Source: Obrimoposthia wandeli
Taxonomy: Eukaryota
NCBI GenBank assembly: GCA_977020255.1
Contig: CDROCS010000506.1
Location: 2,666,001 to 2,730,000, forward strand
Direction: 5' to 3'
Length of the DNA stretch: 64,000 nt
Both the position numbers and the translations under genes were made by a program. Shown piece by piece: positions 8,744 through 36,752 of this stretch. Numbering within the stretch: position 1 is the stretch's first letter; each line of letters starts with the position of its first letter. The notes beneath the pieces were generated by a model that worked only from the letters and a program-made list of their open reading frames with translations, was not told where the DNA came from and ran no database searches.

Positions 8744-8806
8744 GGAGAGGTGGCCGAGTGGCCGAAGGCGCTCCCCTGCTAAGGGAGTATGGGCTTTAAA
8801 TCCCAT

Positions 8807-8835
<29 letters not shown>
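8744..8835 (+). tRNA. tRNA-Ser(GCT)
   Basis: Cloverleaf with long variable arm, anticodon loop CT-GCT-AA, encoded CCA. Confidence 0.96.
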
Positions 8836-8837
<2 letters not shown>

Positions 8838-8920
8838 GTTGTCCTGTTCCTATTACATATTGAAAAATGTGTTATAGTGTTTGGGTCGGCTTTTTGGACG
8901 TTGTAAGAAATAATTGTTGT

Positions 8921-8997
8921 GCGGACGTAGCTCAGCTGGATAGAGTACCTGGCTACGAACCAGGCGGTCGGAGGTTCGAATCCTTCCGTCCGCACCA
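8921..8997 (+). tRNA. tRNA-Arg(ACG) copy 1
   Basis: GCGGACG/CGTCCGC acceptor stem, CT-ACG-AA loop, CCA; 77 nt. Confidence 0.96.
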
Positions 8998-9087
8998 TTA
9001 TTTCGATTAGAATTAATTCTAAGTAATTAGTAGAAGTTGAAAACGCTTAATCTAATTATAAAAAATTATAGGTTAGACCAAATATGT

Positions 9088-9164
9088 GCGGACGTAGCTC
9101 AGCTGGATAGAGTACTTGGCTACGAACCAGGCGGTCGAAGGTTCGAATCCTTCCGTCCGCACCA
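9088..9164 (+). tRNA. tRNA-Arg(ACG) copy 2
   Basis: Same cloverleaf, ACG anticodon. Confidence 0.96.
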
Positions 9165-9234
9165 TTGGTTTTAACAACGAATACTTATTAAGTAAACTGT
9201 CATGTTTACTCGATAAAAACAGAATAAATTATGT

Positions 9235-9311
9235 GCGGACGTAGCTCAGCTGGATAGAGTACTTGGCTACGAACCAGGCGGTCGAAGGTTCGAATCCTTC
9301 CGTCCGCACCA
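9235..9311 (+). tRNA. tRNA-Arg(ACG) copy 3
   Basis: Same cloverleaf, ACG anticodon. Confidence 0.96.
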
Positions 9312-9402
9312 TTTATTCAAATCAACTAGAGATTTAAAACTAGACGTTGAAGAACGATAAACTATAAGTTGTAGAACTATAAACTAATAGAATAAATTAT
9401 GT

Positions 9403-9479
9403 GCGGATGTAGCTCAGCTGGATAGAGTACCTGGCTACGAACCAGGCGGTCGGAGGTTCGACTCCTCCCATCCGCACCA
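9403..9479 (+). tRNA. tRNA-Arg(ACG) copy 4
   Basis: Variant with compensated acceptor stem GCGGATG/CATCCGC. Confidence 0.96.
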
Positions 9480-9560
9480 TTTATTCAAACCACAATTTGA
9501 TTTTTATGGTTTAATTCGTTAAACGGTAAAAATAAAACAAGTTCTTAAAATAGAATATGT

Positions 9561-9637
9561 GCGGACGTAGCTCAGCTGGATAGAGTACTTGGCTACGAAC
9601 CAGGCGGTCGAAGGTTCGAATCCTTCCGTCCGCACCA
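9561..9637 (+). tRNA. tRNA-Arg(ACG) copy 5
   Basis: Same cloverleaf, ACG anticodon. Confidence 0.96.
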
Positions 9638-9661
9638 TCTATTTTAAATATAATTTTTTGT

Positions 9662-9738
9662 GCGGACGTAGCTCAGCTGGATAGAGTACCTGGCTACGAA
9701 CCAGGCGGTCGGAGGTTCGACTCCTCCCGTCCGCACCA
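9662..9738 (+). tRNA. tRNA-Arg(ACG) copy 6
   Basis: Same cloverleaf, ACG anticodon. Confidence 0.96.
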
Positions 9739-9812
9739 TTATTATATTATTATGAATTGTCCAATGTAAGTCTTTACATTGTCGAGGTTATTCGTAATAA
9801 TAGGGTTTGTGT

Positions 9813-9904
9813 GGAGAGGTGGCCGAGTGGCCGAAGGCGCTCCCCTGCTAAGGGAGTATGGGCTTTAAATCCCATCGAGAGTTCGAATCTCTCCCTCTCC
9901 GCCA
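9813..9904 (+). tRNA. tRNA-Ser(GCT) second copy
   Basis: As first copy, with compensatory T-stem change (GAGAG/CTCTC vs GAGGG/CCCTC). Confidence 0.96.
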
Positions 9905-13953: not shown

Positions 13954-15546
13954 TTGAACGTTACATTTGAATCTCTGATTTCAAAATTATCAGAGCCAAG
14001 CAATATACAGTCCCTAAACGGCATTACTCGTGGTATTGAACGTGAGTGTTTACGTGTAAATACAGCTGGGGATTTATCTCAAAACGACCATCCTGCAGCG
14101 TTTGGCTCGGCGTTAAGTCATCAGCACATAACCACAGACTATTCTGAAAGCTTATTAGAATTCATTACCCCTGTTAGCGATAGTGCGGCAACAGCGCAGC
14201 AGCAGTTGAGTGATATTCATCGTCATGTAGCAAAAAACATGGACGGCGAATTATTCTGGCCTTCAAGCATGCCTTGTCAGGTTAATGATGAAAACGATAT
14301 ACCGCTGGCGAAATACGGTACATCGAATACTGGTAAAATGAAGCACACCTATCGTATTGGTTTAAAACACCGTTATGGCAGTAGTATGCAGATTATTTCT
14401 GGCTTGCATTATAACGTATCATTGCCGATGGCATTGTGGCAAAAATTGTACGATATAAAAGGTGAAACTGGCGAGTTACAAGATTTTATTTCTCATAGTT
14501 ATATGGGGCTTATTCGTAATTTTTACCGTTTTGGTTGGTTAGTACCTTATCTATTTGGTGCATCACCGGCGTTAAATCGTTCGTTTTTACCCGCTGAAAA
14601 GCAAAAATCGTTTTCATCATTAGGTGAGAATACGATATACATGCCGCATGCAACGTCATTGCGCATGAGTGATATGGGTTATACCAATAATGCGCAAGAC
14701 GATTTAGTTATTTGCCATAATACGTTAGACCAATATACAAATAGTTTGAAAAAAGCAATTAAAACCAAAGCGCCAGAATTTGCGGATATTGGTATTAAGG
14801 TTAATGGCGAATACCGTCAGCTCAATGACAACGTGCTACAAATCGAAAATGAATTGTATGCACCTATTCGACCTAAACGTGTTGCCAAATCAAGTGAAAA
14901 ACCGTCTGAAGCACTTGCTGCTCGTGGTATTGAATATATTGAAATCCGCTCTTTGGATGTCAATCCGTTCACAGCAACGGGTATCACTACTGCGCAAATG
15001 TCAGTATTAGATAGCTTATTAGTTTGGATGGCATTGCAACCGTCTGCACCTATGACGGCTGATGAAATGGCAGTATGCCGTGACAACAGTACGAAAGTAG
15101 TGATGGAAGGACGTAAGCCTGGTTTAACATTAATGTTAGATGATAAACCTCAAGCACTAACTGATGTTGCTAGTCATATTCTTACTGAAGTTCAACAAGT
15201 TGCACAGTTATTAGATGGTGCCCAGTTAGCAACTAATACAGCAGCGAGTAACTTCTCTGACGCTGTTAGTGCTCAACAAGTATTAATTAATAACCCTGAT
15301 GCATTATTGTCAGGTCAGGTACTTGCTGCAATGAAAGAGCAAAGTTTAGAACATAATGATTTCATTTTAAATTTAGCGAATAAATATAAAAAGGAATTGA
15401 TTGCGACAGATTATGAGCATTGGGATGAAGCTTACTTCAACCAAATGCAGCGTGACTCCGTTGCACAGCAACAACAAATTGAAGCCGATGATACAGTCGA
15501 TTTTGATACGTTTTTAGCTGACTATTTTTCTAATACTAAAAAATAG
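13954..15546 (+). CDS. gshA: Glutamate--cysteine ligase
   Basis: RGIERECLRV, ITTDYSESLLEFITP, QIENELYAPIRPK. Confidence 0.97.
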   Translation: MNVTFESLISKLSEPSNIQSLNGITRGIERECLRVNTAGDLSQNDHPAAFGSALSHQHITTDYSESLLEFITPVSDSAATAQQQLSDIHRHVAKNMDGELFWPSSMPCQVNDENDIPLAKYGTSNTGKMKHTYRIGLKHRYGSSMQIISGLHYNVSLPMALWQKLYDIKGETGELQDFISHSYMGLIRNFYRFGWLVPYLFGASPALNRSFLPAEKQKSFSSLGENTIYMPHATSLRMSDMGYTNNAQDDLVICHNTLDQYTNSLKKAIKTKAPEFADIGIKVNGEYRQLNDNVLQIENELYAPIRPKRVAKSSEKPSEALAARGIEYIEIRSLDVNPFTATGITTAQMSVLDSLLVWMALQPSAPMTADEMAVCRDNSTKVVMEGRKPGLTLMLDDKPQALTDVASHILTEVQQVAQLLDGAQLATNTAASNFSDAVSAQQVLINNPDALLSGQVLAAMKEQSLEHNDFILNLANKYKKELIATDYEHWDEAYFNQMQRDSVAQQQQIEADDTVDFDTFLADYFSNTKK

Positions 15547-15548
15547 AC

Positions 15549-15600
15549 AAAAAAAAGAGCCTAAATAAGGCTCCAAAAAATGAAAAAACAACTCTTGCAC
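15549..15600 (-). ncRNA. Candidate sigmaE-dependent sRNA, copy 1 (MicA genomic position)
   Basis: Minus strand GAACCA-16 bp-TCTGA promoter (15631-15605), ~50-nt body ending in GAGCCT/AGGCTC hairpin plus U run. Confidence 0.7.
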
Positions 15601-15661
15601 TTAATCAGACTACAGGATGTAGTTATGGTTCATAAATAATTGTAAAAGTTGAAAAATAGAT

Positions 15662-15714
15662 AAAAAAAAGGAGCCTTAATAGGGCTCCAAAAAATGAAAA
15701 AACAACTCTTGCAC
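15662..15714 (-). ncRNA. Candidate sigmaE-dependent sRNA, copy 2
   Basis: Minus strand GAACCA-16 bp-TCAGA promoter (15745-15719), same 5' body as copy 1, GGAGCC/GGCTCC terminator plus U run. Confidence 0.7.
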
Positions 15715-15791
15715 CTAATCTGACTACAGCATTAAGCAATGGTTCATAAAATTATTATTGTTTTTTAAATTATTTCAACGGAGTGTTAATA

Positions 15792-16301
15792 ATGCCATTA
15801 CTGGATAGTTTTACGGTCGACCATACCATCATGAATGCACCCGCAGTGCGTATAGCTAAGACAATGGCAACACCAAGCAAAGATACCATTACTGTCTTTG
15901 ATTTGCGTTTCTGTGTACCAAATAAAGAGATTTTAAGTGAAAAGGGTATTCATACCTTAGAGCATCTTTATGCTGGTTTTATGCGTGATCACCTTAATTC
16001 AGCAACGGTCGAGATTATTGACCTGTCGCCAATGGGTTGTCGTACTGGTTTTTACATGAGTTTGATTGGAGCCCCGACTGAGCAACAAGTTGCAGATGCT
16101 TGGTTAGCAGCAATGAAAGATGTATTAACGGTTAAAGATCAAAATGCCATTCCAGAATTAAACGAATATCAATGTGGTACTTACCAGATGCATTCGTTAG
16201 ATGAAGCAAAGCAAATTGCCCAGGCGATTGTGACAGCGGGTATTGGCGTTAATCAAAATGATGATTTGTTGTTAGCAGATGAAATTCTAAATAAATTATA
16301 A
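15792..16301 (+). CDS. luxS: S-ribosylhomocysteine lyase (AI-2 synthase)
   Basis: [27 protein letters not shown]. Confidence 0.98.
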
Positions 16302-16363: not shown

Positions 16364-16417
16364 ATTTATATTGTTAAAGCATTATTTTAATCAATAAATA
16401 GTAAAATAGGAGTGTTT

Positions 16418-17017
16418 ATGAAAACACGATATTTGATGAATAAAAAAGGTTACTTGGTGGCTTTGTTTAGTTTGGCGCTAACAGCATGTTCAAGCGTTAG
16501 TGTGAGTACTGATTATGATCAAGACGCTGACTTTAGCGAATTAAAAGGCTTTAATTGGTTGCCTAAGTCGGCAGTGGTTGAGAAAGAAAGTGCTTATCTG
16601 AATAACCGCATCATGGATGTACGTATAACGAAAGCGATTGATAAACAATTAGTCGCGCAAGGTTTTAAGTTTGCTAGTACGGCTGATTTTTATATCAACT
16701 ACAGTATTACGTCAGAAAAGAAAACCGACATCCGTAGTTATGATAACTATTCTGGTTATGGACCAAGTTGGGGATGGGGCGTAGGTTATGGCCATCGCGG
16801 TATGTCACTGAGCGCGAGCACCGAGACGCGTATTGATGAATATCAACAAGGCAGTCTTATTATTGATGTTATCGATCCGAAGAGCTTAGAATTAATTTGG
16901 CGTGGTGTTGGTAGTAAGCGTCTACCAGAATCGACGGATGCGGCTGAGATGGATAAGTTAGTTGCTCACATTGTGAAGAATATCTTAGATAAATTCCCGC
17001 CTAAAGCTGGTAAATAA
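16418..17017 (+). CDS. DUF4136-type lipoprotein
   Basis: Lipobox LTAC, DYDQDADFS, YQQGSLIIDVID...LIWRG. Confidence 0.8.
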   Translation: MKTRYLMNKKGYLVALFSLALTACSSVSVSTDYDQDADFSELKGFNWLPKSAVVEKESAYLNNRIMDVRITKAIDKQLVAQGFKFASTADFYINYSITSEKKTDIRSYDNYSGYGPSWGWGVGYGHRGMSLSASTETRIDEYQQGSLIIDVIDPKSLELIWRGVGSKRLPESTDAAEMDKLVAHIVKNILDKFPPKAGK

Positions 17018-28652: not shown

Positions 28653-29460
28653 AGGATTAAGTTGCAGGATGCGACAAAAGGACATCTTCAGGAAGAAGAC
28701 AAAGGATTAAGTTGCAGGATGCGACACAAGGAACATCTTCAGGAAGAAGACAAAGGATTAAGTTGCAGGATGCAGCACAGGACATCTTCAGGAAGAAGAC
28801 AAAGGATTAAGTTGCAGGATGCAGCACAGGACATCTTCAGGAAGAAGACAAAGGATTAAGTTGCAGGATGCAGCACAGGACATCTTCAGGAAGAAGACCA
28901 AAGGATTAAGTTGCAGGATGCAGCACAGGACATCTTCAGGAAGAAGACAAAGGATTAAGTTGCAGGATGCAGCACAGGACATCTTCAGGACGAAGAGTAA
29001 AGGATTAAGTTGCAGGATGCAGCACAGGACATCTTCAGGACGAAGAACAAAGGATTAAGTTGCAGGATGCAGCACAGGACATCTTCAGGACGAAGAACAA
29101 AGGATTAAGTTGCAGGATGCAGCACAGGACATCTTCAGGACGAAGAACAAAGGATTAAGTTGCAGGATGCAGCACAGGACATCTTCAGGACGAAGAACAA
29201 AGGATTAAGTTGCAGGATGCAGCACAGGACATCTTCAGGACGAAGAACAAAGGATTAAGTTGCAGGATGCAGCACAGGACATCTTCAGGACGAAGAACAA
29301 AGGATTAAGTTGCAGGATGCAGCACAGGACATCTTCAGGACGAAGAACAAAGGATTAAGTTGCAGGACGCGACAAAAGGACATCTTCAGGAAGAAGACAA
29401 AGGATTAAGTTGCAGGACGCGACACAAGGACAGCTTCAGGAAGAAGACCAAAGGATTGCG
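28653..29460 (+). repeat. Tandem array of 16 full ~50-bp units plus a partial 17th
   Basis: Consensus AGGATTAAGTTGCAGGATGCAGCACAGGACATCTTCAGGACGAAGAACAA; period 49-51 bp, no unique spacers. Confidence 0.97.
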
Positions 29461-29619
29461 TTACAGGATGTAACATAGAAATAAATCAGGATCGATTTAT
29501 TGTGCTAGGAAGGCAAAAGGACACTCCGACGGATTGGGAAGTGGAAATTTAACGGAATAAATAGAGTCAGGATTTAGCAGGGTTGCTACGCGTTTCATGG
29601 ATTGAGATATATAGACTTT

Positions 29620-29646
29620 AGGGCGGCACATTGTGCCGCCTTTTCT
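29620..29646 (+). terminator. Terminator of the CsrB-like RNA
   Basis: GGCGGCAC/GTGCCGCC followed by TTTT. Confidence 0.85.
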
Positions 29647-29775
29647 ATATCTGCGATTTAATAAATCACATTTGGCTTTCCACCTGCACACTCTTCTATT
29701 ACACCTTTCTACTACATGCCTTCATTTCATATGTTTTATATTTAAAAATCATTAGGCGCTTCAACATAATTATTG

Positions 29776-35303: not shown

Positions 35304-35420
35304 TTTTTTTGTACAACAGAACAATTTTTTGTACAGTAGAACAATAAGTAAAGTTATATTTTCCGATTTTAATGAGATAGAACTCAAATTTTTTAAACAT
35401 TTTGATTTAAATTTTGCTAG

Positions 35421-36752
<1,332 letters not shown>

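What the first reader, a model, noticed from the sequence alone, without database searches (positions are those of the whole stretch)
15549..15745. Twin sigmaE-promoter sRNAs duplicated at the MicA locus between gshA and luxS
Seen: two 114-bp-period copies on the minus strand. Each has GAACCA-N16-TC(T/A)GA, then GTGCAAGAGTTGTTTTTTCATTTTTTGGAGCC, a hairpin and a U tract. The promoter spacers and hairpin loops diverge while the -35, -10, spacing, 5' body and stems are kept, which is the pattern expected from selection on sRNA function. Known: sigmaE promoters are GAACTT-N16-TCTGA/TCAAA, and enterobacterial MicA is a sigmaE sRNA divergent from luxS next to gshA. The sequence does not resemble MicA, VrrA or MicV as I recall them. 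Inference: a new ~50-nt envelope-stress sRNA family occupying the MicA slot, present in two copies.
Basis: partly seen in the sequence, partly recalled or inferred. Interest (0 to 1): 0.75.

Follow-up and report, generated by a model that had tools for sequence, protein, structure and literature searches.

The report
Twin envelope-stress small RNAs in Moritella
Between the gshA and luxS genes of the marine bacterium Moritella lie two (three in one species) near-identical genes for a regulatory RNA of about 50 bases, each with a stress-sigma-factor-type promoter; the family is undescribed but of an ordinary kind, and it sits exactly where E. coli keeps MicA.

Summary
On the minus strand, between gshA (ends 15546) and luxS (starts 15792), two units lie 114 nt apart. 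Each has GAACCA-N16-TC(A/T)GA, six bases, an invariant 5' block starting GCAAGAGUUG, one G+C hairpin and a U8 tail.

The window is from Moritella. The same units occur in every Moritella gshA locus I could fetch: 4 species genomes, 3 further assemblies and 7 metagenome contigs. One species has three copies. They are absent from 76 luxS loci of other genera.

Across 22 copies the -35 box (0.99 pairwise identity), -10 box (0.90), RNA 5' part (0.94) and U tract (0.97) are kept. The spacer, discriminator, hairpin loop and flanks drift (0.5-0.76). This is the conservation profile of a promoter plus a small RNA.

Rfam 15 has no match, and the MicA model and my own model fail reciprocally. The RybB/MicV/VrrA seed is absent.

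Position, strand and promoter geometry equal those of E. coli micA. The non-consensus promoter bases also resemble micA's more than chance (p about 0.002).

The 5' part is antisense to an "AAAAAAUGAAAAAA.." start region. It pairs with E. coli ompA across the AUG at -19.3 kcal/mol.

Expression, RpoE dependence and the real targets remain untested. Verdict: a new member of a known kind.

The parts
15740..15745 (-). Copy A, -35 box GAACCA, preceded by an invariant TTTAT and an A/T-rich stretch up to about 15763
   Evidence: The -35 segment has 0.99 pairwise identity over 22 copies.
15719..15723 (-). Copy A, -10 box TCAGA, 16 nt after the -35 box
   Evidence: The 6+16+5 geometry is the same as in E. 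coli micA, rybB, degP and rpoH P3.
15662..15712 (-). Copy A, predicted RNA of 51 nt. Predicted +1 is G15712, the single-stranded 5' part is 15712-15689, the hairpin is 15688-15670 and the U8 tail is 15669-15662.
   Evidence: +1 is placed by analogy with micA and rybB, six bases after the -10 box. The invariant block starts at exactly that G. Terminator scan. Fold. Model R1 scores 82.0 bits.
15626..15631 (-). Copy B, -35 box GAACCA
15605..15609 (-). Copy B, -10 box TCTGA
15549..15598 (-). Copy B, predicted RNA of 50 nt. Predicted +1 is G15598, the single-stranded 5' part is 15598-15575, the hairpin is 15574-15557 and the U8 tail is 15556-15549. It ends 3 nt from the gshA stop codon.
   Evidence: fold z-score -3.35. 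Model R1 scores 82.8 bits.
13954..15546 (+). gshA (glutamate-cysteine ligase), convergent with the RNA genes. No T-tract follows the hairpins on this strand, so read-through towards luxS is likely.
   Evidence: and the sequence read.
15792..16301 (+). luxS (S-ribosylhomocysteine lyase), divergent from copy A. Its ATG lies 46 nt from copy A's -35 box.

Best explanation
These are two independently transcribed sibling genes for one trans-acting small RNA of about 50 nt, found only in the genus Moritella. Each gene has its own promoter of the RpoE (sigma-E, ECF02) type and its own intrinsic terminator. When envelope stress frees sigma-E, both genes would fire. The product has a 24-nt unstructured 5' part (GCAAGAGUUGUUUUUUCAUUUUUU), then one G+C hairpin and a U8 tail. 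A U-rich stretch, a hairpin and a poly-U tail together form the layout of an Hfq-binding module. The 5' part is the antisense of a translation start region of the form A-rich spacer, AUG, AAA AAA, then ACU/CAA CUC UUG. That is the start of a signal peptide beginning Met-Lys-Lys. I propose that the RNA covers the start codon of one or more mRNAs for outer-membrane or other exported proteins, with ompA the first candidate. It would block translation and so lower the load of new envelope proteins, as MicA, RybB, MicV and VrrA do. The two copies have identical 5' parts, so duplication gives dosage or differently tuned promoters, not new targets. Shown here: the anatomy, its conservation, its restriction to Moritella and the lack of a match to any known family. 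Inferred: transcription, RpoE dependence, Hfq binding and the targets.
For: Anatomy. Conservation: both copies are present in 4 Moritella species genomes (L001-L004, with three copies in L004). They are also in 3 further assemblies and 3 read-set contigs that share the window's LuxS, and in 7 metagenome contigs. Covariance model R1 separates 24 copies at 70-87 bits from everything else at 34 bits or less. Pairwise identity by segment is -35 0.99, spacer 0.76, -10 0.90, discriminator 0.73, RNA 5' part 0.94, hairpin 0.76, U tract 0.97 and flanks about 0.5. Meanwhile gshA is only 74-92% identical at the DNA level among these genomes. The hairpin stays paired in 93% of cells, with G-C/A-U/G-U exchanges at the closing pair and at an extra inner pair. 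The invariant block begins exactly at the +1 predicted from micA and rybB. The A and B copies form separate orthologous groups: upstream-flank identity is A-A 0.84, B-B 0.76 and A-B 0.21. The duplication is therefore old and both copies were kept. Two metagenome lineages (L084, L088) lost luxS at this site but kept both RNA genes. The Moritella 5' part pairs with the E. coli ompA start region over 19 bp at -19.3 kcal/mol. That is better than any of 992 candidate start sites in the window (best -18.8, mean -10.2, sd 2.4). Selection experiments in V. cholerae showed that OmpA repression is the key output of sigma-E sRNAs (PMC6694218).
Against: I have no expression data. The -35 box reads TGAACCA rather than the GGAACTT of the four E. 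coli sigma-E promoters I fetched, so only the GAAC core matches. No other sigma-E-type promoter could be found in the window to calibrate a Moritella consensus. One copy (L001 B) has GAAGCA at -35. Covariation in the stem is slight; most pairs simply never vary. No target was found in the 64 kb window. The ompA pairing was computed on the E. coli gene, because no Moritella ompA could be fetched. Much of that pairing is A-U in low-complexity sequence. A sigma-70-like TTGAAA-16-AATAAT lies just upstream of copy A.
Confidence: 0.6

Rival explanations
1. It is MicA itself in the evolutionary sense. The gene at this site would descend from the same ancestor as enterobacterial micA. It would have kept its place, strand and promoter while the RNA body lost the first stem-loop and changed its pairing region, and it would then have been duplicated. 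This rivals only the 'new family' label, not the mechanism.
For: The gene order, strand and convergence on the gshA stop codon are the same, and the -35 box lies 35 nt (E. coli) or 46 nt (Moritella) from the luxS ATG. The 6+16+5 geometry and the 6-nt discriminator before a +1 G are identical. At the 47 non-consensus positions from -50 to +8, Moritella A matches micA at 25 (block-shuffle p 0.0015) and B at 23 (p 0.02). The degP and rpoH P3 promoters give no signal, and rybB gives p 0.03-0.04.
Against: The similarity of the RNA bodies is at chance level. The MicA covariance model finds nothing in Moritella, and the Moritella model finds nothing in E. coli micA. No sigma-E-type unit lies upstream of luxS in any of the 76 loci from Psychromonas, Vibrio, Photobacterium, Aliivibrio, Shewanella, Aeromonadaceae and others. 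Common descent would therefore need many losses. The promoter test rests on 47 short, A/T-rich positions and 8 comparisons.
Confidence: 0.35
2. The promoters are real but are served by another sigma factor: another ECF sigma, or sigma-70 for copy A. The RNAs would then answer to a signal other than envelope stress.
For: Only the GAAC and TC..A cores match the sigma-E consensus. Many ECF sigmas use an AAC-type -35 box (general knowledge). A sigma-70-like site scoring 10 of 12 lies at 15778-15751.
Against: The spacing, the TCTGA/TCAGA -10 box and the distance to +1 equal those of four proven E. coli sigma-E promoters. The sigma-70-like site exists only for copy A. It overlaps the luxS ribosome-binding region on the other strand, and its -35 is not kept in L088, where luxS is gone.
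Confidence: 0.2
3. The main role is cis-antisense. gshA transcripts or long luxS transcripts read through the region and are fully complementary to both RNAs. Duplexes would then be cut by RNase III, which would tune luxS, as reported for MicA and luxS in E. coli.
For: On the + strand the hairpins are followed by A-rich, not T-rich, sequence, so nothing resembling an intrinsic terminator separates gshA from luxS. E. coli luxS mRNAs start more than 300 nt upstream and overlap micA, with MicA- and RNase III-dependent processing (PMC2956633).
Against: L084 and L088 lack luxS at this site but keep both RNA genes intact. A purely cis function would not hold 24 nt invariant while the rest of the spacer drifts. 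In E. coli the cis effect did not change LuxS protein levels. A cis effect may exist as a side effect.
Confidence: 0.12
4. It is not an RNA gene: either a duplicated intergenic repeat that merely supplies terminators, or a pair of tiny protein-coding genes.
For: The hairpins lie right after the gshA stop codon. Short ORFs can be read on both strands.
Against: The T-tracts are on the minus strand only. The element occurs at no other place in the 680 kb searched. The promoter boxes are better conserved than the hairpin loop. ORFs on either strand vary from 3 to 25 codons, shift frame through T-run length changes and have no ribosome-binding site.
Confidence: 0.05

Closest known systems
MicA (SraD; Rfam RF00078) of Enterobacteriaceae
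   Same: Both lie between gshA and luxS on the opposite strand, diverging from luxS and ending at the gshA stop codon. Both have a sigma-E-type promoter GAAC-N18-TCTGA with +1 six bases after the -10 box. Both are short RNAs with an unstructured 5' pairing region, a U-rich stretch, a terminator and a U tail. The likely logic, repression of outer-membrane protein mRNAs, is also shared.
   Different: The Moritella RNA is 50-51 nt with one hairpin, against 72 nt with two. Sequence similarity of the RNA bodies is at chance level. The MicA covariance model does not detect it. It is predicted to pair over the start codon rather than at -21..-6 of ompA. It is present in 2-3 tandem copies. Published surveys limit MicA to Enterobacteriaceae (PMC4618604).
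RybB (E. coli, Salmonella) and MicV / VrrA (Vibrio cholerae)
   Same: All are sigma-E-dependent small RNAs whose extreme 5' end is the seed and which shut down omp mRNAs. V. cholerae also keeps two RNAs with one shared seed.
   Different: Their shared seed CRCUGCUUUU is absent here. They lie at other loci (micV lies between vc2640 and vc2641). VrrA is 140 nt. MicV and VrrA are not tandem duplicates.
Sibling small RNAs such as OmrA/OmrB (adjacent genes) and Qrr1-5
   Same: Several gene copies have the same pairing region, each with its own copy of the same specialised promoter, and are kept over long periods.
   Different: They use different regulators (OmpR; LuxO with sigma-54) and have no sequence relation to the Moritella RNA. 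The Moritella copies are almost identical over the whole RNA, not just the seed.

Membership tests
MicA (Rfam RF00078) | Match to the family covariance model at or above the gathering score (41 bits) | tested here: not met
   No MicA hit at gathering score in the window or in four Moritella loci. None at E<=10 in 15450-15850 with lax filters. Positive control: E. coli micA scores 83.9 bits.
MicA (Rfam RF00078) | Gene between gshA and luxS, on the opposite strand, divergent from luxS | tested here: met
   for Moritella; for E. coli.
MicA (Rfam RF00078) | About 72 nt, with an internal stem-loop plus a terminator stem-loop | tested here: not met
   The RNA is 50-51 nt, and the terminator hairpin is the only hairpin common to the seven copies folded.
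MicA (Rfam RF00078) | 5' pairing region recognisably similar to MicA nt 1-30 | tested here: not met
   Local alignment score 12, against a shuffle mean of 11.5; more than half of the shuffles score as well.
Sigma-E (RpoE, ECF02) dependent promoters | -35 GGAACTT, a spacer that places TCTGA/TCAAA 16 nt after the hexamer, and +1 about 6 nt further on | tested here: inconclusive
   The GAAC core, the 16-nt spacer, the TC(A/T)GA box and the 6-nt discriminator are met in 23 of 24 copies. They match the geometry of E. coli micA, rybB, degP and rpoH P3. The bases flanking the core differ (TGAACCA).
Sigma-E (RpoE, ECF02) dependent promoters | Transcription requires RpoE and rises under envelope stress | not testable with these tools
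   This needs RNA data from Moritella or a reporter assay.
RybB / MicV / VrrA seed class | Seed CRCUGCUUUU at the pairing region (PMC6694218) | tested here: not met
   The motif is absent from all 22 aligned copies.
Hfq-dependent trans-acting sRNAs | Hfq-binding module: a U-rich stretch, then a terminator hairpin, then a 3' tail of at least 6-7 U | tested here: met
   UUUUUUCAUUUUUU lies directly before the hairpin. The U8 tail is 0.97 identical across copies. Actual Hfq binding was not tested.
Hfq-dependent trans-acting sRNAs | Base-pairs with target mRNAs encoded elsewhere | not testable with these tools
   No full Moritella genome was available. There is no target in the 64 kb window. Only a proxy could be computed: the E. 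coli ompA start region at -19.3 kcal/mol.
Sibling (multicopy) sRNAs | Two or more separately promoted copies with the same pairing region, kept in related species | tested here: met
   There are 2 copies in 13 loci and 3 in L004. The A and B lineages are distinguishable across species.

The most novel reading that the evidence does not exclude
The gshA-luxS gap is an ancient, fixed 'slot' for a sigma-E small RNA, older than the split between Moritellaceae and Enterobacteriaceae. The promoter, the strand and the job (silencing ompA-type mRNAs) stayed. The RNA body was rebuilt, from a two-hairpin 72-nt MicA that pairs upstream of the ompA ribosome-binding site to a one-hairpin 50-nt RNA that covers the start codon. 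It was then amplified to 2-3 copies. That would be a clear natural case of a small RNA being replaced in place under a conserved promoter. It would also mean MicA is not confined to Enterobacteriaceae.
Probability: 0.3. Interest if true: 0.65.

Novelty: new member of a known kind. Interest (0 to 1): 0.5.

Why it matters
Sigma-E small RNAs are the standard example of RNA-based envelope-stress control, but they are known almost only from enterics and Vibrio cholerae. This finding adds a compact, cleanly delimited example from a cold- and deep-sea genus. It has a very short RNA, a seed that looks like an anti-start-codon for Met-Lys-Lys signal peptides, and 2-3 tandem copies kept for a long time. 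Because it occupies the MicA position with a micA-like promoter but an unrelated RNA body, it offers a concrete test. The question is whether small RNAs evolve by turnover of the transcribed part under a stable promoter, or whether the same slot was invented twice. Moritella viscosa is a fish pathogen, so a regulator of its surface proteins may also interest vaccine work. None of this changes the general picture of how such RNAs work.

Tried and rejected
1. Rfam 15 was searched on the window at gathering scores and on the 401-nt region at E<=10. The only hit was TarB at 25 bits (threshold 80), and it spans the promoter, so I rejected it as chance.
2. MicA membership was rejected by covariance models in both directions and by a shuffle test.
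3. MicV/VrrA/RybB membership was rejected: they have another seed and lie at another locus.
4. I looked for homologues upstream of luxS in 76 loci from other genera by motif scan and by covariance model. None were found. Most of those genera have an extra + strand ORF or no gshA there.
5. A metagenome scan with a 21-nt core returned 7 Moritella loci and 9 unrelated contigs. In the unrelated contigs the match is the start of some gene reading MKK.LL., which I rejected as chance.
6. A target search over 992 candidate start sites in the window found no convincing real gene start.
7. Coding potential on both strands was rejected.
8. I looked for other sigma-E-type promoters in the window to calibrate a Moritella consensus. 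None was convincing.
9. I could not obtain a Moritella ompA or rpoE locus. A word search starting from E. coli OmpA would be swamped by enteric hits and carries no organism labels. I did not run the large protein searches.

Full report
WHAT IS THERE

The window comes from a Moritella species. Its LuxS is 98% identical to that of a Moritella MAG and 90-96% identical to three other Moritella genomes. The next genera (Psychromonas, Agarivorans, Vibrio, Shewanella) are at 76-83%. The exact LuxS protein occurs in three NCBI Moritella-type assemblies.

gshA (13954-15546, +) and luxS (15792-16301, +) were confirmed by NCBIfam equivalog models.

The 245-nt gap between them holds two direct copies, 114 nt apart, with 89% identity over 88 nt. 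Read on the minus strand, each copy has these parts:
- an A/T-rich stretch ending in TTTAT;
- GAACCA;
- 16 nt of spacer;
- TCAGA (copy A) or TCTGA (copy B);
- six bases of discriminator;
- a 24-nt block beginning GCAAGAGUUG and continuing with U6-CA-U6;
- a hairpin with a 6-7 bp G+C stem;
- eight U.

Folding seven copies from four genomes gives the terminator hairpin as the only shared structure. The 5' part is left open.

IS IT MORE THAN CHANCE?

Within the window the two promoter-like motifs are not independent, because they are duplicates. The test is therefore comparative.

All four Moritella species genomes carry the units, and the most divergent one (L004) has three. Six further contigs encoding the same LuxS have two each. 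A metagenome scan with a 21-nt core returned seven more Moritella-type loci. A covariance model built from 22 copies scores 24 copies at 70-87 bits. Nothing else in the 680 kb held scores above 34 bits, and the hits between 26 and 34 bits are contigs that had been fetched for matching the core pattern.

Mean pairwise identity over 22 copies, by segment:

| Segment | Identity |
|---|---|
| -35 box | 0.99 |
| Spacer | 0.76 |
| -10 box | 0.90 |
| Discriminator | 0.73 |
| RNA 5' part | 0.94 |
| Hairpin | 0.76 |
| U tract | 0.97 |
| Flanks | about 0.5 |

In the same genomes gshA is only 74-92% identical at the DNA level. The stem is paired in 93% of cells. G-C, G-U and A-U alternate at the closing pair, and some copies have an extra inner pair. 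Most pairs never vary, so covariation adds little.

The invariant block starts at exactly the G that would be +1 if the promoter works like E. coli micA and rybB. In both of those the RNA starts six bases after the -10 box. That coincidence between a conservation boundary and a predicted start is, to me, the strongest single argument for a transcribed RNA.

Neither strand holds a conserved reading frame. The T-tracts follow the hairpins on the minus strand only.

THE TWO COPIES

The luxS-proximal copy (A) and the gshA-proximal copy (B) form separate orthologous groups across species. Their upstream flanks are 0.84 (A-A) and 0.76 (B-B) identical within a group but 0.21 between groups. The duplication is therefore older than the sampled species, and both copies have been kept.

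Their 5' parts are identical. They differ in promoter spacer, in -10 box (TCAGA against mostly TCTGA), in the bases just before +1 and in the hairpin loop. This points to dosage or differential promoter tuning rather than to new targets.

WHAT IT IS NOT

No Rfam 15 family reaches threshold. At E<=10 the only notable hit is TarB at 25 bits (threshold 80), which spans the promoter and is meaningless.

MicA does not match, although the same model scores E. coli micA at 83.9 bits. The Moritella model does not hit E. coli micA either. Similarity of the RNA bodies equals the shuffle expectation.

The seed shared by RybB, MicV and VrrA (CRCUGCUUUU) is absent, and micV sits at vc2640/vc2641.

The searchable literature holds no description of Moritella small RNAs beyond a count in a genome table. 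A 2015 review confines MicA to Enterobacteriaceae.

RELATION TO MICA

Gene order, strand and ends are the same as in E. coli. There, micA lies between gshA and luxS on the opposite strand, with its -35 box 35 nt from the luxS ATG and its 3' end 10 nt from the gshA stop. In Moritella the corresponding distances are 46 nt and 3 nt.

I fetched four E. coli sigma-E promoters: micA, rybB, degP and rpoH P3. All have GAAC plus two bases, 16 nt, then TCTGA or TCTTA. The Moritella units have the same geometry.

At the 47 positions outside the consensus cores, from 14 nt upstream of -35 to +8:
- copy A matches micA at 25 positions (block-wise shuffle mean 15.2, p 0.0015);
- copy B matches micA at 23 positions (p 0.02);
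- rybB gives p 0.03-0.04;
- degP and rpoH P3 give nothing.

This is suggestive, not proof, of common descent of the locus. Against it, none of 76 luxS loci from other genera has such a unit. Many of those loci have another ORF between gshA and luxS, or no gshA nearby. I put common descent at roughly one in three.

HOW IT PROBABLY WORKS

Inferred steps:
1. Envelope stress releases RpoE.
2. Both promoters fire.
3. The RNA binds Hfq through its U-rich stretch, hairpin and U tail.
4. The open 5' part pairs with mRNA start regions.

The complement of the 5' part reads as an A-rich spacer, AUG, AAA AAA, then CAA CUC UUG. That is the start of a Met-Lys-Lys signal peptide.

I chose E. coli ompA a priori as a proxy, because ompA is the common key target of sigma-E RNAs. 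Its start region pairs with the Moritella 5' part over 19 bp across the AUG at -19.3 kcal/mol. That beats all 992 candidate start sites in the window (best -18.8, mean -10.2, sd 2.4). MicA on the same region gives -23.1 kcal/mol at its own site upstream.

I could not fetch a Moritella ompA, so the target remains a prediction.

A cis-antisense effect on gshA-luxS read-through transcripts is likely as a by-product. No + strand terminator lies between the genes, and E. coli shows such an effect (PMC2956633). It cannot be the reason for conservation, however. Two metagenome lineages have replaced luxS with a five-gene catabolic cassette and still keep both RNA genes intact.

CAVEATS

- There is no expression evidence.
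- The -35 box is TGAACCA, not GGAACTT.
- One copy has GAAGCA at -35.
- No second sigma-E-type promoter in the window could serve as an internal standard.
- A sigma-70-like site lies just upstream of copy A only. It overlaps the luxS ribosome-binding region, and its -35 is not kept where luxS is missing.

VERDICT

This is an undescribed, genus-restricted sibling pair of small RNAs of the sigma-E/Hfq kind, in the MicA position. It is a new member of a known kind and of moderate interest. The interesting open question is whether it is a remodelled micA.

Noticed in passing
window 28666-28940, 28963-29239, 29313-29650 (+): Three head-to-tail CsrB/RsmB-family RNAs (85.9, 81.3 and 76.8 bits; gathering score 71). 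Tandem triplication of this RNA at one locus looks unusual and echoes the tandem sRNA duplication of the finding. A simple search for a GacA/UvrY box (TGTAAG-N6-CTTACA, up to 2 mismatches) found none nearby.
   Followed up: partly
window 8744-9901 (+): Eight tRNA genes lie in a row, downstream of what look like alaS and csrA-region genes.
   Followed up: no
L004:2424-2971 (-): The most divergent Moritella genome has three copies of the unit instead of two, spread over about 550 nt with unrelated spacers of 160-260 nt. Its seeds carry small changes (GUUA, GUUU, and GGCAAGAG at the start), which would be useful for compensatory-change tests on targets.
   Followed up: partly
L088:6200-11070 and L084 (same arrangement): In these metagenome Moritella contigs luxS is missing at this site. 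It is replaced by five genes (SDR, amidohydrolase_2, MR/MLE enolase, class II aldolase, LysE exporter), while both RNA genes are kept next to gshA. A paper states that M. viscosa has no complete quorum-sensing system.
   Followed up: partly
window 15751-15778 (-): A sigma-70-like promoter (TTGAAA, 16 nt, AATAAT; 10 of 12) lies directly upstream of copy A's -35 box. It could give a longer transcript of copy A. It overlaps the luxS ribosome-binding region on the other strand.
   Followed up: partly
L001:2833-2838 (-): Copy B of this Moritella MAG has GAAGCA instead of GAACCA at -35. This is a change in the most conserved core base, so the promoter is possibly weakened or the base is a sequencing error.
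   Followed up: no
window 16412-17017 (+): The gene after luxS encodes a DUF4136 protein of about 199 aa, conserved at this position in all Moritella loci. Its start region is not complementary to the RNA.
   Followed up: no
L005-L015, L017, L020 and others (Psychromonas, Vibrio, Photobacterium): about 640-1050 nt between gshA and luxS: In these genera the gshA-luxS gap is 640-1050 nt and appears, from the sequence read of a few loci, to be filled by an extra ORF. No minus-strand sigma-E-type unit is there. A few Vibrio and Aliivibrio loci have gaps of only 16-137 nt.
   Followed up: partly
window 35339-35366 (+): This is another GAAC-N19-TCCGA match (17-nt spacer), about 90 nt upstream of ORF 35454-36752. 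The gene was not identified, and the match is probably chance.
   Followed up: no
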